42,276 nt of DNA from Octopus bimaculoides (GCF_001194135.2 NC_068983.1:55849121-55891396), one strand, 5' to 3'; positions 6,052-10,819 are shown, counted from the stretch's first letter. A program made the numbers and translations. The notes: generated by a model not told the origin, from the sequence alone.

Positions 6052-8681
6052 NNNNNNNNNNNNNNNNNNNNNNNNNNNNNNNNNNNNNNNNNNNNNNNNN
6101 NNNNNNNNNNNNNNNNNNNNNNNNNNNNNNNNNNNNNNNNNNNNNNNNNNNNNNNNNNNNNNNNNNNNNNNNNNNNNNNNNNNNNNNNNNNNNNNNNNNN
6201 NNNNNNNNNNNNNNNNNNNNNNNNNNNNNNNNNNNNNNNNNNNNNNNNNNNNNNNNNNNNNNNNNNNNNNNNNNNNNNNNNNNNNNNNNNNNNNNNNNNN
6301 NNNNNNNNNNNNNNNNNNNNNNNNNNNNNNNNNNNNNNNNNNNNNNNNNNNNNNNNNNNNNNNNNNNNNNNNNNNNNNNNNNNNNNNNNNNNNNNNNNNN
6401 NNNNNNNNNNNNNNNNNNNNNNNNNNNNNNNNNNNNNNNNNNNNTTGGATAAGCTATAAATGCTTTCTGATCGAGGCACAAGGCCATCAATTTCTTCGCT
6501 GGTGAGGAGGATCAGCCGATAGCATCAACTCCAGTGCGTGACTGGTATTTTATTATTTTTTTTTTTCTTATCCCTAGCTGACCCCGTGCCATCAAAAGTG
6601 ACGGCTAATTGTAGTATTTTATTTATAAATATGGATGGTAAATCAAATTAATACACTTGTCAATGTTACTTAATATTTGTCTTTTGAGATGTGACATCGA
6701 TCATCGTTAATTACTGAAAGAACGCTGGTTCACACATACAAACGTTCACATATTTCCCTTGTATACGCACGCGTATACACACATATACTAACACAAAGTT
6801 GAAACGCTGTTTGATTTTTTCTTCACCGTAGAACTTCAATCATCCCACTACCAAGTTTGCCATCACTCCTTCCTTCCTTATTCATCTATCACCCCTTCCT
6901 TCTCATTCCTATCACCCCTTCTTTCTCATTCATATATTATGGCAGAGAAAACTACAAGAGTATTATTATAACAGGTCCTTGGAGGAATGAAAGAAAATTA
7001 AACCAGAATTTGAACGTCAATCATAAAGTAACCGCAACAAATACCACAAGCTCTTTTTTTTTATGCGACTCTACCGATTCCACCAGTAAGGCGCCTTAAA
7101 ATAATAGCTTCTAGTTGAAGCAGAAAGTCAGCAAATTATGAGGAAAGGGTTTGTTAATACTATCAAATCCAATACATGATCGATACTTTATTTTATCGAC
7201 CCTGAAAAGATGAAAGGTAAAATTGTAGAAAAACGGAAAACACCACAAATCGTTTGTGCCGCTTGTGTGTCAGCTTTCCACGACAGTATTGGATATGAAT
7301 AAATTTAGACTATTCACAATGTATCTCTGAAAGCTTTCATTAAAACATGCTTATTTAAGAAACTTATAAGGAAAGTCGTGTATGTGTGTGTGTGTGGAAT
7401 GCGTTTGTAATCTTGTTAATGCCATCAAAATGGTTGTAGTTAGAATGCTTCTGATCAGGTTTTGGGCTAAGCTACAGTAACCTCAGATTTGTGATTCAAT
7501 TAGCAGACGACATGGTTGCTCAGTCTGTTAGTTATAGTAGCATAATTTCCTTCAAATCACACTCTGCCATCTTTTTAAAAAGGAAGGATAAACTTATTCT
7601 ATAAATATTTTCTGAAGAAGAAATCGGCAGTGCGCCAGCATAGCCTCAACCCTCCAGCTGAAACTAGTAAAGAGAAACGATAAAGAAGAAAATATAAAGG
7701 AGAAAGAAGAACAGGTCTGACAGTACTGGAATGTCGTTTTATATAAATCTACACAGTCAGAAACTAAACTAAAACTTCACCTTTTGATTTAGTAAAGAAC
7801 GACAAAATATTGTGTTGCTTCTGAATTGGAGAGGGCATGCCGTTGATGAGGTAGTGAATGGTGACAAAAGGACTTTGACAAACCGAACTGATTGATTGAT
7901 TAACCGAATGATTACTAAAACAATCGATTAGTTAATTGGCTAAATGGTTGATAAATTGATAAATAAAAAAATGAAGCAGTGAAATAGAACCAATGCGTGT
8001 GATTATTACTGACATAACGACCTTCCCGAGAGGCAACAAAATCTGTTTCAACACACAAGTTTAGATCAGGAATCTTACAAACAGAAAGCAAAAACCAAAG
8101 ATTTTTATCTAATTTTCCTTGTATTTATTTTTTTATTTATATACTTCTTAGGAACGGTTCACCGGTGTTACGTAACCCATTTAATCCTAGCGGTGCCATA
8201 TGGCACCGCAAAAATTGGGTATATAAAAAAATTTATAACAACGACAGGAACAGTAATTTCCATGGAACATGTATTGAATATGTTAGGAATAGTTCTTGCC
8301 TCACTTCAACAGTTTAGAAGCTGTGCGACCTTGGGAGAGTGAGCATGTGTGTTAGTCTGCTAATGTGAAAGACATCCTCTGCGGAGATGACTTCTCTAAA
8401 CAGTTGAGTTACTATTTCTTTGCTCATTCGGGAATATGGTCAAAATATCTTGTATTTTCTTAGAATAATATCTAAATACTTCGTTAGAGATAGGAACAAA
8501 TGAAAATAATCCATAAGATCTATTGCAGTGACGTTTGTTTTGTTGAATTATTTTACGGTGCCATATGGCACTGCTAGGAAATACACAGTACACCATGTGT
8601 TATTCCTATATTTTGGGGGTTTTTTCCCTTAGAAAATGGACTTTCAACAATGGAAGCATTGTTTTCTCTTACTATACATGC

Positions 8682-8934
8682 TATTGCCACCGCCAAGGAT
8701 GTTATATTTTCGCCGGCGTCGGTTTGTCCGTCTGACTGTCAGTCTTTTTGTTAGCAACATAACTCTAAAAGTTATGGATGATTTTTGATGAAATTTTCAG
8801 GAAATGTTCATAATAGGACAAGGAACACATGATTAGATTTTGGAGGCGACCTGGTGTTAACCAACTATAGGGGTGGGGAAGAAGCATGCTGCATGGCAGA
8901 GGTCTGCACTTTCCGAGTGCTAAAGTTTCTAGTT
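8682..8934 (+). mobile_element. Helentron-associated non-autonomous element (HINE/DINE-1-like) nested in the piggyBac
   Basis: 5' CCACCGCCAAGG, a GTCC/GTCT simple-repeat patch, subterminal ATGGCAGAGGT, short 3' hairpin GCACT-ttccg-AGTGC, and a TTCTAGTT end. Confidence 0.6.
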
Positions 8935-9860
8935 TTTCACTATTGTGTATTTTTTTTTTTTCAGAAAATGTGAACTGTCTTTGAATAAAATTTTGAGAAT
9001 TCTTGAAGAGGAAGACGTCGGCCCATATGACATTTACATTGAACCCCACCTCCCGGCGGTTACTGACCTGATAGATGAGAATTTGGGGAAAGAAGTGGAA
9101 ACTGGCACTGTTCAACACAATCATCATCTCTCAGGAAACCAACTTCACGCTGCAACAGAATTACAATTACGAAGTACGAAAACAAAAGATAACGAAGTGG
9201 TGCAGAAAGAAAGTTCTTCAGAAAATGGGACAGGCTTCAGGTGTGGGGAAACAAAAGGTAAAAATGCCAAAGTACTTGGAAAAAAGCCGAAACACAAGTG
9301 ATGCCCTCCATTTTTCCTGAGTGTAACTATTCAAAATACAGGGATTTTAATGAAGTGGAATTATTTAAGCTATTCTATGGTGATGATATAATTGAGTACT
9401 CAATGAAAGCAATGACAAAATACTGCTTGAAAAAGAAAAAAAGTGATAAATTTCCAAAACTGTTACCGCTCATATCTCATTTACAAAAGAAATTTATGGA
9501 ACATTTTGTTCCAGAACCAAGTATTTCACATGATGAAGCAATGGTAGAATATTTTGGCAAGCATTGTTGGTAAGCAATCTATTCGCATTAAACACATAAG
9601 ATTCGGATACAAAATCTGGTGTCAAAATTCATCTACAGGATATCTATTAGCCTTTGATCCCTACCAAGGGAAGACCCACTGTGGAAATGTAGAATTAGGA
9701 TGAACTTATGGAAAGTGTTCATCAACAATACTTCATTTACTGGATTCCTATAGCGATGAGAAAAAAATACCTTCCTTACCAGATATATTTTGATAACTGG
9801 TTCACATCAGTGCCACTTCAAAATCAACTCAAAACTTTGGTATTCAACGGTACTGGTACA

Positions 9861-10118
9861 TTCTTTTCTGCTCTAGGCACAAGGCCCGAGATTTTGGGGG
9901 AGGGACCCCAGTACCAAGTGGTACTTAATTTATCGACTCCGAAAGGATGAAAGGCAAAGTCGACCTCGGCGGAATTTGAACTCAGAGTGCTAACGTTTCT
10001 TATTTCTTTATTGCGCACAAGGGGCTAAACATAGAGGGGACAAACAAGGAAAGACAAAGGGATTAAGTCGATTATATCGACTCCAGTGCGTAACTGGTAC
10101 TTAATTTATCTACTCCGA
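9861..10118 (-). mobile_element. SINE family B dimer-like copy inside the piggyBac transposase
   Basis: Two partial cores with two different tails. It cuts the transposase after NGTGT. Confidence 0.85.
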
Positions 10119-10819
10119 CTATAAAAGAGGAACATATTATACATTTGATTACTGAATGAAAAGGAAGAAATTACCACAATTGTATTTTTGTACCATTATT
10201 ATCCTAACGGTATCATATGGCACCTGGGCTTATTTAATGTATTTTGAATTTTACATTTCTGGCTTCAAATCAATGTAACTGGTGTTTAAACGAATCCGTA
10301 AACAAAGATTCAGTATAATCAAAAATAAAAAGTTATACTCGCAACAAACGGGTTAATGTCTTCCAGGAATGAAACGAATCGAATTATATGTGAACAGAAT
10401 TCATGACAACTAACTTTCTATCATTAAATTCCTTCTATCAATTACAAAACAAAATGAGACCTTCGTGAAAGTAATCTAAGGGAAATAACTTTTGTATAGC
10501 TTAAATTTTATGATTCTCATAGTTATTTACCGTTGTTATATTAAAACAAATCACTTAGTTTTCGTTTCGTTATCATATTCCAATCGTAAATTTTGCTTTA
10601 CTTTATCAACCCCTGTGGCATTTGAACCCAGATAGGAAAGATTCGTAACTTCAATCGTACTTTTTATTTCATCTCAAATTTCTTCATAGTTCAGATGTTG
10701 TCCTGGTAGACTTTGCCTTCCGTTTTTCTGGAGTTGATGAAATAAGAACTAGTCAAGGATTGGGGTTGATTTAAAAGACGAACCTCCTTCTATATTATAG
10801 GCTTTGTGCCAATCCTTGT

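What the first reader, a model, noticed from the sequence alone, without database searches (positions are those of the whole stretch)
8176..10356. piggyBac with the full PGBD3/MER85 exon-trap architecture in a mollusc
Seen: left end CCCATTTAATCCTAGC + palindrome GGTGCCATATGGCACC, two more palindrome copies (one upstream, one downstream of the ORF), a strong T-tract CAG acceptor ending at 8964 one base before the reading frame, AATAAA at 10324 and an AAACGGG|TTAA end. The N-terminus reads LSLNKILRILEEED..IYIEP..NHHLSGNQLHAA. Recalled knowledge: human MER85 begins CCCATTTATGCCTAGT + palindrome GTTCCATTATTGGAAC, and PGBD3 (TLSLHEITDLLETDD..IVIQPP..NNLPGSLLHTAA) carries three such palindromes and is spliced to CSB exon 5 as an exon trap. 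Inference: the same layout with a different palindrome sequence, implying an old or horizontally spread subfamily in which the transposase and its binding palindrome co-vary. It could also generate host-transposase fusions. This copy is dead.
Basis: partly seen in the sequence, partly recalled or inferred. Interest (0 to 1): 0.72.

Follow-up and report, generated by a model that had tools for sequence, protein, structure and literature searches.

The report
Dead PGBD3-like piggyBac transposon copy
This is a broken copy of a piggyBac transposon built like the human PGBD3/MER85 element, which is a known design, and its "exon-trap" splice acceptor is most likely the end of the transposon's own small intron.

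Summary
Window 8176-10352 is a dead, internally deleted piggyBac element. Its layout matches the published human PGBD3/MER85 element. It has a 13-bp TIR that is 11/13 identical to MER85, and a 16-bp palindrome 3 bp inside that TIR. An inverted palindrome copy lies upstream of the ORF. A third copy lies 115 bp from the right TIR, against 114 bp in PGBD3.

Seven related families fetched from public assemblies share this layout. Their palindrome half-sites change symmetrically: GGTGCC, GATGCC, GTTGCC, GGTACC, GTTCCA.

The acceptor at 8964 is real and conserved, but it is probably not an ATG-less exon trap. In six related families a 17-nt mini-exon (ATG + 14 nt) followed by GTAAGT or GCAAGT lies upstream inside the element. 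It joins in frame, as a phase-2 intron, to the acceptor. The window keeps the mini-exon (8387-8403) with a mutated donor. Palindrome 2 lies inside this intron.

The transposase falls in a sister clade of PGBD3/PGBD2, about 38% identical to PGBD3, not within PGBD3 itself. The AATAAA is uninformative. I could not verify that the host is a mollusc. The splice-site and palindrome design is already published for invertebrate PGBD3-like elements, so this is a new member of a known kind.

The parts
8172..8175 (.). Degenerate left target-site duplication (GTAA; TTAA expected)
   Evidence: The relatives L001, L003, L004, L005, L007, L009 and L011 all have TTAA here.
8176..8188 (+). Left 13-bp terminal inverted repeat CCCATTTAATCCT
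   Evidence: It is 11/13 identical to the MER85 TIR CCCATTTATGCCT and identical to the L005 TIR.
8192..8207 (+). Palindrome 1, GGTGCCATATGGCACC, 3 bp inside the left TIR; inferred binding site for a dimer of the transposase C-terminal domain
   Evidence: MER85/PGBD3 and T. ni piggyBac have the same 3-bp spacing. A CRD dimer binds the equivalent T. ni repeat.
8327..8346 (+). Conserved block GACCTTGGGAGAGTGAGCAT, about 40 nt upstream of the mini-exon; a possible core promoter or transcription start region (inference)
   Evidence: It aligns with L001 and L005 in alignment A1. No functional test was done.
8387..8403 (+). 17-nt start-codon mini-exon, ATGACTTCTCTAAACAG, followed by a mutated donor (TTGAGT instead of GTGAGT)
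   Evidence: In L001/L002, L003, L004, L005, L007 and L011 the same position holds ATG + 14 nt followed by GTAAGT or GCAAGT (L011 read). Joined to 8965 it reads MTSLNRKCELSLNKIL in frame.
8404..8964 (+). The transposon's own phase-2 intron: 561 nt here, about 230-260 nt before the nested insertion
   Evidence: One search gives introns of 214-455 nt in relatives. The Chilo suppressalis gene model P0107 splices exactly here.
8551..8592 (+). Palindrome 2 (8557-8572, GGTGCCATATGGCACT) with its GCTAGGAAATACACAGTACA flank; an inverted copy of the unit found at the left end and the 3' end
   Evidence: I2: 93% complementary to 8185-8213; I3: complementary to 10189-10224. The pal-GCTAGG arrangement is the same in human PGBD3, L005, L007 and L011.
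8639..8940 (.). Nested insertion of an unrelated repeat inside the intron, flanked by 30-bp direct repeats (8609-8638 and 8941-8970) that duplicate the acceptor region
   Evidence: D5; weak second copy at 40143-39851, minus strand. It is absent from L001, L005 and L007.
8950..8964 (+). 3' splice acceptor: T12 + CAG
   Evidence: Seven relatives have an acceptor in the same place and phase. About 30 of 47 relatives' ORFs that extend upstream of the N-terminal motif show the read-through signature.
8965..9863 (+). Remnant of the main transposase exon (N-terminal motif through the second catalytic Asp, DNWFTS). It has three frameshifts, an in-frame TGA at 9701-9703 and a roughly 79-codon deletion near 9430-9459. 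It is truncated at residue 382 of 610.
   Evidence: (PF13843).
9860..10118 (.). SINE-like repeat fragments replacing the 3' 37% of the ORF (third catalytic Asp and cysteine-rich domain lost)
   Evidence: One search finds copies at 38914-39353, 16524-16677 and 26128-26202. Searches show the truncation.
10189..10224 (+). 3' sub-terminal unit TGTACCATTATTATCCTAAC + palindrome 3 (10209-10224, GGTATCATATGGCACC)
   Evidence: TTTTGTAC..CCTAGC-palindrome is conserved in L001, L003 and L004. It lies 115 bp from the right TIR, against 114 bp in PGBD3.
10324..10329 (+). AATAAA hexamer; present, but not evidence of a polyadenylation site
   Evidence: 97 copies in the window; not conserved at this position.
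10340..10352 (+). Right 13-bp TIR, CGCAACAAACGGG (reverse complement CCCGTTTGTTGCG)
   Evidence: It aligns with the L001 right TIR (reverse complement CCCATTTGTTCCG).
10353..10356 (.). Right TTAA target-site duplication

Best explanation
Window 8176-10352 is a dead, non-autonomous copy of a cut-and-paste piggyBac transposon. It belongs to the large 'PGBD3-like' group of invertebrate elements.

When intact, an element of this family is about 2.6 kb long and has these parts in order:
- TTAA target site;
- a 13-bp TIR, a 3-bp spacer and palindrome 1;
- a short upstream region and a 17-nt mini-exon carrying the ATG;
- a phase-2 intron of about 230 nt that contains palindrome 2 in inverted orientation, usually 54-61 nt before the 3' splice site;
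- one large exon encoding a transposase of about 600 aa;
- palindrome 3;
- about 115-130 bp of spacer, the right TIR and TTAA.

The three 16-bp palindromes are inferred to be binding sites for dimers of the transposase C-terminal cysteine-rich domain. This has been shown for PGBD3 on MER85 and for T. ni piggyBac, but not here. Their half-sites drift from family to family while keeping dyad symmetry.

The T-tract/CAG at 8964 is the acceptor of the element's own intron. Because it sits just before a self-contained ORF, an insertion into a host intron could also be spliced to host exons. That is the route by which CSB-PGBD3 arose.

The sequence shows the anatomy, its conservation and the decay of this copy. 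Splicing, DNA binding and any host fusion are inferred.
For: Identity as piggyBac:
- PF13843 hits the ORF remnants.
- tblastn matches to 24 relatives cover 9250-9869.

Closest relatives:
- P0003, P0025/L005 and the L001/L002 pair. L001 and L002 are 97.6% identical, TTAA-flanked, 2572-bp elements.
- They group with the window at 83%, 85% and 97.5% bootstrap.

Layout compared with PGBD3/MER85:
- The published description has a palindrome 3 bp from the 5' TIR, a second 59 bp upstream of the ORF, and a third 114 bp from the 3' TIR.
- The sequences were checked in Table S1 of that paper.
- The window has the 3-bp spacing, a twin acceptor site 61 nt after palindrome 2, and 115 bp to the right TIR.

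Same layout in relatives:
- L001, L003, L004, L005, L007 and L011.
- L006 has the palindromes and right end but was not seen complete.
- L008/L009 are a MER85-identical family.

Mini-exon and intron:
- ATG + 14 nt is followed by GTAAGT or GCAAGT, with in-frame phase-2 joins, in six families besides the window (L011).
- These align positionally.
- The EVM gene model P0107 (MTNRKH|LKLHEIADLL) uses this splice.
- L006 has the same 17 nt fused directly to the ORF, with no intron.

Function of the palindromes by analogy:
- EMSA and ChIP-seq for PGBD3.
- Cryo-EM of a CRD dimer on the T. ni repeat.
Against: - No RNA evidence for the mini-exon splice was obtainable. The only independent support is one automated gene model and the conservation itself.
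- In the window the donor reads TT, not GT, so the mini-exon is identified here by position and homology only.
- In the PGBD3 family proper (L009 and human PGBD3) no ATG mini-exon is present. The ATG lies just after the acceptor, and only a donor-like AG|GTAAAT or CAG|GTACAT sits at the aligned position. The coding mini-exon may therefore be specific to the window's clade.
- Deep branches of the tree are poorly supported, and PGBD1, PGBD4, PGBD5 and T. ni PB were not in it.
- The C-terminal domain that would bind the palindromes is deleted in this copy.
Confidence: 0.8

Rival explanations
1. The family is an obligate exon trap: the ORF has no start codon or promoter of its own, and it is expressed only when spliced to upstream host exons through the acceptor at 8964.
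For: - In the window and in L001, L003, L004, L005 and L007 there is no in-frame ATG between the acceptor and the conserved N-terminal motif.
- Newman et al. 2008 proposed an exon-trap lifestyle for piggyBac.
- Two annotated relatives are predicted as host fusions joined at this point: P0082, ankyrin repeats + PF13843 in Cyprideis torosa, and P0117 in Periplaneta americana.
Against: - An ATG exactly 17 nt before a consensus donor lies inside the element, upstream of the acceptor, and joins in frame in six other independent families.
- L006 carries the same 17 nt fused to the ORF without an intron.
- The Chilo gene model uses the internal splice.
- An ATG-less element would not conserve that mini-exon.
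Confidence: 0.1
2. The T-tract/CAG is a chance feature, or a by-product of the nested insertion at 8639-8940 (target-site duplication or a repeat tail), with no role in the element.
For: - The acceptor region is duplicated (8609-8638 and 8941-8970, 70% identical) around an inserted repeat.
- The genome is AT-rich, with many simple repeats.
Against: - Y12+CAG occurs only twice in 84.5 kb of both strands.
- Relatives without the insertion have a pyrimidine tract + CAG at the same place and in the same phase.
- About 30 of 47 relatives' ORFs read through such a tract immediately before the N-terminal motif.
- Published 3' splice sites lie at the same place in PGBD3 and in spider, aphid and moth elements.
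Confidence: 0.03
3. The locus is a composite. A short MITE (8176-8592, bounded by the inverted palindrome units) lies next to an unrelated truncated piggyBac, so the 'three-palindrome layout' is accidental.
For: - Palindromes 1 and 2 with their flanks form a 29-nt, 93% complementary inverted pair 337 nt apart (I2), which resembles a MITE.
- The unit at 10192-10224 is a direct repeat of the left end (D3).
Against: - The identical arrangement occurs in every complete relative, including two 97.6% identical TTAA-flanked copies, and in human PGBD3. That arrangement is palindrome 1 next to the TIR, an inverted copy in the intron, and a direct copy about 115-130 bp from the right TIR.
- The inner unit lacks the CCC terminus and TTAA.
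Confidence: 0.03

Closest known systems
Human PGBD3 transposon and its MITE MER85 (Newman et al. 2008, PMC2268245; Gray et al. 2012, PMC3459987)
   Same: - TTAA target site.
- 13-bp TIR, 11/13 identical (CCCATTTAATCCT vs CCCATTTATGCCT).
- A 3-bp spacer, then a 16-bp palindrome.
- A second palindrome in inverted orientation with a (G/A)CTAGG flank upstream of the ORF.
- A third palindrome 115 bp (here) vs 114 bp (PGBD3) from the 3' TIR.
- A 3' splice site immediately upstream of an N-terminus of the type LSLxEIxDLLE..IxIEPP..LSGxQL.
- Collinear transposase: P0025 vs the MER85-type P0138 is 38% identical over the full length.
   Different: - The palindrome sequence differs: GGTGCC-ATAT-GGCACC vs GTTCCA-TTAT-TGGAAC.
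- The start codon lies in an upstream 17-nt mini-exon, not just after the acceptor.
- The transposase is in a sister clade, not within PGBD3.
- There is no evidence of domestication or host fusion at this locus.
- This copy lacks the 3' 37% of the ORF.
Invertebrate PGBD3-related piggyBac-like elements with a 3' splice site and poly(A) signal (SmiPBLE7, Api-PGBD-like3, CsuPBLE, piggyBac-2_Hmel; Bouallegue et al. 2017, PMC5381638)
   Same: - The same super-clade and the same conserved acceptor before the ORF.
- The Chilo suppressalis locus L007, probably the CsuPBLE family, shows the same mini-exon, intron palindrome and acceptor.
   Different: - That paper reads the acceptor as an ancestral exon-trap signal. 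In the sections I read, it does not describe an internal ATG mini-exon and donor.
- The window's family is a separate lineage. Its nearest relatives are in TARA Oceans metagenome scaffolds and unnamed ENA assemblies.
Trichoplusia ni piggyBac and piggyBat (PDB 6x67/6x68, 9c0f; Chen et al. 2020, PMC7351741)
   Same: - TTAA target and CCC...GGG 13-bp TIRs.
- A palindromic internal repeat 3 bp from the left TIR and further from the right TIR.
- A DDE_Tnp_1_7 core and a C-terminal cysteine-rich domain, which binds the palindrome as a dimer.
   Different: - Only distant protein similarity: 52 and 88 bits for an intact relative of the window.
- T. ni has two internal repeats rather than three, with a 31-bp rather than about 115-bp right spacer.
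- No ATG mini-exon is known for T. ni.

Membership tests
piggyBac superfamily | TTAA target-site duplication flanking the element | tested here: inconclusive
   The right flank is TTAA (10353-10356). The left flank is GTAA (8172-8175), one mismatch. Complete relatives have TTAA on both sides.
piggyBac superfamily | Short TIRs beginning 5'-CCC and ending GGG-3' | tested here: met
   CCCATTTAATCCT at 8176-8188 and CGCAACAAACGGG at 10340-10352; the ends align with relatives.
piggyBac superfamily | Transposase with a DDE_Tnp_1_7 (PF13843) catalytic core | tested here: met
   PF13843 scores E 4.6e-6 (26.6 bits, cut-off 22.4) on 9298-9570, and there is a second fragment. The intact relative P0025 scores E 1.2e-76.
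piggyBac superfamily | Complete DDD triad and C-terminal cysteine-rich domain | tested here: not met
   The window copy ends at residue 382 of 610. The third Asp and the cysteine-rich domain are replaced by SINE-like sequence. Relatives such as P0025 and the L001 composite have them. The copy is a dead member, not a non-member.
PGBD3/MER85-type element layout | 16-bp palindrome 3 bp internal to the 5' TIR | tested here: met
   TIR 8176-8188, spacer AGC, palindrome 8192-8207; compared with Gray 2012.
PGBD3/MER85-type element layout | Second palindrome shortly upstream of the ORF and a third downstream of it, about 114 bp from the 3' TIR | tested here: met
   Palindromes at 8557-8572 and 10209-10224. 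The third is 115 bp from the right TIR. The second is 61 nt before the twin acceptor site, or 392 nt before the acceptor once the 302-bp insertion is counted.
PGBD3/MER85-type element layout | 3' splice site immediately upstream of the transposase ORF | tested here: met
   T12CAG ends at 8964 and is conserved in place and phase in relatives. Its use in splicing was not tested.
PGBD3/MER85-type element layout | Polyadenylation signal downstream of the ORF | tested here: inconclusive
   AATAAA at 10324 is a common hexamer here (97 copies) and is not conserved in position. The true 3' end of the ORF is deleted.
PGBD3/MER85 family in the strict sense | MER85 palindrome GTTCCAnnnnTGGAAC and a transposase clustering with PGBD3 | tested here: not met
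   The palindrome is GGTGCCATATGGCACC. In the NJ tree the window's family lies outside the PGBD3+PGBD2 clade, which has 97.5% support. Identity to a MER85-type transposase is 38%.
Exon trap (host-transposase fusion as in CSB-PGBD3) | Transcripts joining host exons to the element's acceptor | not testable with these tools
   No RNA data are available for the source genome, and no host exons were recognised near the element. Only annotation-level fusion models exist in distant relatives (P0082, P0117).

The most novel reading that the evidence does not exclude
The 3' splice site that made PGBD3-type piggyBacs 'natural exon traps' is the acceptor of an old intron belonging to the transposon itself. 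That intron follows a 17-nt start-codon mini-exon and carries a transposase-binding palindrome about 55-60 nt upstream of the acceptor. This gene structure is conserved from moth to marine-invertebrate families and has apparently not been described. It would explain why this clade is repeatedly captured as a C-terminal fusion partner. It also raises the possibility that transposase binding inside its own intron feeds back on its expression.
Probability: 0.4. Interest if true: 0.5.

Novelty: new member of a known kind. Interest (0 to 1): 0.33.

Why it matters
As a locus it is one more decayed transposon copy.

Its value is comparative. Together with the relatives fetched here, it shows that the complete PGBD3/MER85 cis design is shared across a wide clade of animal piggyBacs. 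That design comprises the TIR, the 3-bp spacer, three oriented palindromes, the roughly 115-bp right spacer and the acceptor. The palindrome half-sites change in a symmetry-preserving way, which gives a ready-made natural series for testing DNA recognition by the cysteine-rich domain.

It also suggests a simpler origin for the 'exon-trap' property behind CSB-PGBD3, PGBD1 and PGBD2. On this view the acceptor was already there to serve the transposon's own intron.

Intact relatives such as P0025, P0039 and P0138 may be of practical interest as candidate active transposases.

Tried and rejected
- P0003, the protein closest to the window, could not be located on any contig. It is a UniParc entry and probably a gene model on a paralogous degenerate copy. 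Its junction ..FSKQ|DIFIE.. falls exactly at the predicted donor. However, it skips the first 64 nt of exon 2 and reads the mini-exon region in another frame, so I do not count it as splicing evidence.
- I guessed that P0075 and P0043 (N-termini 'M + 5-7 residues + motif') were spliced transcripts. P0075 turned out to be a read-through ORF called from a TTG on a genomic contig. P0043 is a genomic intron-less variant.
The human entry itself was not returned. Only the returned database proteins were used afterwards.
- The listing of cluster members gave no organism names, so neither the window's host nor the hosts of the ENA and Logan relatives could be identified.
- Pfam gave nothing for other window ORFs, including an RT-looking one at 16647-17505.
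- A tandem duplication of the 5' unit like that in L005 was looked for in the window and not found. Only the 30-bp acceptor duplication exists.

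
Full report
**1. Observation**

- CCCATTTAATCCTAGC starts at 8176.
- GGTGCCATATGGCACC lies at 8192-8207, with further copies at 8557-8572 (1 mismatch) and 10209-10224 (2 mismatches).
- A T12-CAG ends at 8964.
- AATAAA lies at 10324.
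- AAACGGG|TTAA lies at 10346-10356.

The three palindrome matches are the only ones in the 42-kb window, against 0.08 expected by chance. A Y12+CAG site occurs only twice on both strands. The frame after 8964 reads (R)KCELSLNKILRILEEED..DIYIEP..NHHLSGNQLHAA. The left flank is GTAA rather than TTAA. AATAAA occurs 97 times in the window, so it carries no weight.

**2. What it is**

Pfam PF13843, the piggyBac DDE domain, hits the ORF remnants. Twenty-four database proteins align to 9250-9869 in three shifting frames.

Measured against the closest intact protein (P0025, 610 aa), the copy has these lesions (DNA alignment):
- frameshifts near 9270, 9568 and 9764;
- an in-frame TGA at 9701-9703;
- a deletion of about 79 codons at 9430-9459;
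- truncation at residue 382.

From 9860 to 10118 the ORF is replaced by SINE-like repeats that have other copies in the window. The third catalytic Asp and the cysteine-rich domain are therefore gone. A further repeat of about 300 bp sits at 8639-8940. It is flanked by 30-bp direct repeats that duplicate the acceptor region.

**3. Relatives and layout**

Fetching the contigs that encode related proteins gave the following elements.
- L001 and L002 are two 97.6% identical, TTAA-flanked elements; the L001 copy is 2572 bp.
- L003, L004, L005, L007 and L011 are further families with the same layout. L006 is only partly seen.
- L007 is from the moth Chilo suppressalis.
- L005 and L006 are TARA Oceans metagenome scaffolds.
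- L008 and L009 come from an intact family whose TIR and palindrome are identical to human MER85.

The complete relatives share one plan:
- a 13-bp TIR, a 3-bp spacer and a 16-bp palindrome;
- a second palindrome in inverted orientation, with a GCTAG(G) flank, upstream of the ORF;
- a third palindrome, in the orientation of the first, about 115-130 bp from the right TIR.

This is what Gray et al. 2012 describe for human PGBD3: 3 bp from the 5' TIR, 59 bp upstream of the ORF, and 114 bp from the 3' TIR. The window's TIR is 11/13 identical to MER85, and its right spacer is 115 bp.

Half-sites differ between families but always on both arms:

| Family | Palindrome half-sites |
|---|---|
| Window, L001 | GGTGCC/GGCACC |
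| L005 | GATGCC/GGCATC |
| L003, L006, L007, L011 | GTTGCC/GGCAAC |
| L004 | GGTACC/GGTACC |
| MER85, L008/L009 | GTTCCA/TGGAAC |

These were read. Preserved dyad symmetry is what a dimer-binding site predicts. PGBD3 binds its palindrome in vitro and in vivo, and a dimer of the T. ni cysteine-rich domain binds the equivalent repeat. Binding was not tested for this family.

**4. The acceptor**

The acceptor is conserved in place and in phase in every relative. About 30 of 47 non-redundant relatives' ORFs that extend upstream read through a pyrimidine tract and an AG|R codon just before the N-terminal motif.

The acceptor is not the start of an ATG-less trap. Inside each element, upstream of palindrome 2, lies ATG + 14 nt followed by a consensus donor. 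Joining it to the acceptor is in frame each time (L011).

| Locus | Mini-exon \| donor |
|---|---|
| L001, L002 | ATGGCTACCAAAAAGAG\|GCAAGT |
| L003 | ATGTCTCGATCAGTAAA\|GTAAGT |
| L004 | ATGGCGACCAATAAAAA\|GTAAGT |
| L005 | ATGGCTTCCAATAACAA\|GTAAGT |
| L007 | ATGACGAACAGAAAACA\|GTAAGT |
| L011 | ATGGATATAAATTTTGT\|GTAAGT |
| Window (8387-8403) | ATGACTTCTCTAAACAG\|TTGAGT |

- The coding part is always 17 nt, which makes a phase-2 intron.
- The window aligns at the same position. Its donor is mutated, and the joined reading is MTSLNRKCELSLNKIL.
- The Chilo gene model P0107 (MTNRKH|LKLHEIADLL) uses exactly this splice.
- L006 has the 17 nt fused to the ORF without an intron.
- Palindrome 2 lies in the intron. 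It sits 54-61 nt before the acceptor in L001, L005, L007, L011 and at the window's twin site, and further away in L003 and L004.
- In the PGBD3 family proper (L009 and human) the ATG lies just after the acceptor. Only a donor-like AG|GTAAAT or CAG|GTACAT is found at the aligned upstream position.

I therefore read the acceptor as the 3' end of the transposon's own intron. Capture of host exons is a possible side effect. Two annotated fusion models in relatives (P0082, ankyrin repeats; P0117) show what that would look like. No RNA evidence could be obtained.

**5. Phylogeny**

I built a neighbour-joining tree of 42 sequences over 554 columns, with 200 bootstraps and piggyBat as outgroup.
- The window groups with P0003 (83%), then P0025 (85%), then the L001 family (97.5%).
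- This family lies inside a poorly resolved clade of invertebrate elements that NCBI names 'PGBD3-like'.
- PGBD3 proper, including the Stegodyphus element, groups with PGBD2 and some insect elements in a separate clade with 97.5% support.
- P0025 is 38% identical to a MER85-type transposase over its full length.
- An intact relative scores only 88 bits against piggyBat and 52 bits against T. ni PB.

The element therefore belongs to the PGBD2/PGBD3 super-group, but not to PGBD3 itself.

**6. Comparison with the literature and novelty**

- Newman et al. 2008 proposed the exon-trap idea.
- Gray et al. 2012 described the three palindromes.
- Bouallegue et al. 2017 found the same acceptor and poly(A) signal in spider, aphid and moth relatives and inferred common ancestry.
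- A 2026 paper notes a second left-end palindrome in an active aphid element.

The finding is therefore a new member of a known kind. In the papers I read I found no description of the conserved 17-nt mini-exon and own intron. If that holds, it is a modest new point.

**7. Limits**

- The host species could not be identified, so 'mollusc' is untested. A (TAACCC)n array at 20459-20529 and the marine-metagenome relatives are compatible with it but prove nothing.
- Splicing, DNA binding and host fusion are inferences.

Noticed in passing
window 8639-8940 and 39831-40370 (minus strand): The repeat nested in the element's intron has a weakly similar, longer copy near the end of the window. That copy carries a 179-aa ORF (..LPWQRFALSECS..). 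It has no Pfam match, and its family is unknown.
   Followed up: partly
window 9860-10118; also 38914-39353, 16524-16677, 26128-26202: A SINE-like repeat family is present in several copies. Two fragments of it replace the 3' part of the transposase ORF. Its tail GAGTGCTAANGTTTCT also ends the unrelated insert at 8915-8930.
   Followed up: partly
window 20459-20529: An interstitial (TAACCC)n array of 11.5 units, the complement of the TTAGGG telomere repeat.
   Followed up: no
window 16647-17505 (minus strand): Two adjacent ORFs (140 and 148 aa) look like a retroelement reverse-transcriptase fragment (..FYRQKSGTAMGT..). Pfam gave no hit at E <= 0.01.
   Followed up: partly
window, e.g. 3300-3450, 6030-6440, 12500-13400, 18500-18700, 19560-20230, 26200-26680: Long runs of N (assembly gaps) and many TA, CT and ACAT microsatellites. 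The window comes from a draft assembly.
   Followed up: no
L005 167-577 and 580-996: The closest intact relative carries an old tandem duplication (73% identity) of the whole unit of upstream region, mini-exon, intron with palindrome, and acceptor. Only the second unit keeps the ATG.
   Followed up: partly
L006 772-790 and 2770-2830: This family has the 17 mini-exon nucleotides fused directly to the main ORF (intron lost, or never gained). It has two tandem copies of the 3' palindrome unit.
   Followed up: partly
L008 and L009 (Logan runs SRR25569786 and SRR25569770): An apparently intact 585-aa piggyBac whose TIR (CCCATTTATGCCT) and palindrome (GTTCCATTATTGGAAC) are identical to human MER85. 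It occurs in an unidentified organism. This fits the horizontal spread of the PGBD3 family already suggested for a spider.
   Followed up: partly
Proteins P0082 (Cyprideis torosa) and P0117 (Periplaneta americana): Annotated gene models fuse ankyrin repeats (P0082) or an unrelated ~105-aa N-terminus (P0117) to a PGBD3-like transposase, exactly at the position of the conserved acceptor. They are candidate natural exon-trap events, known at annotation level only.
   Followed up: no
Protein P0003 (UniParc UPI00078A081B) vs window 8314-8403: The closest database protein is 90% identical to the window's mini-exon region, but read in another frame. It jumps from the predicted donor straight to DIFIE. 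It is probably an automated gene model on a paralogous degenerate copy. Its source genome is likely the window's species or a close relative.
   Followed up: partly
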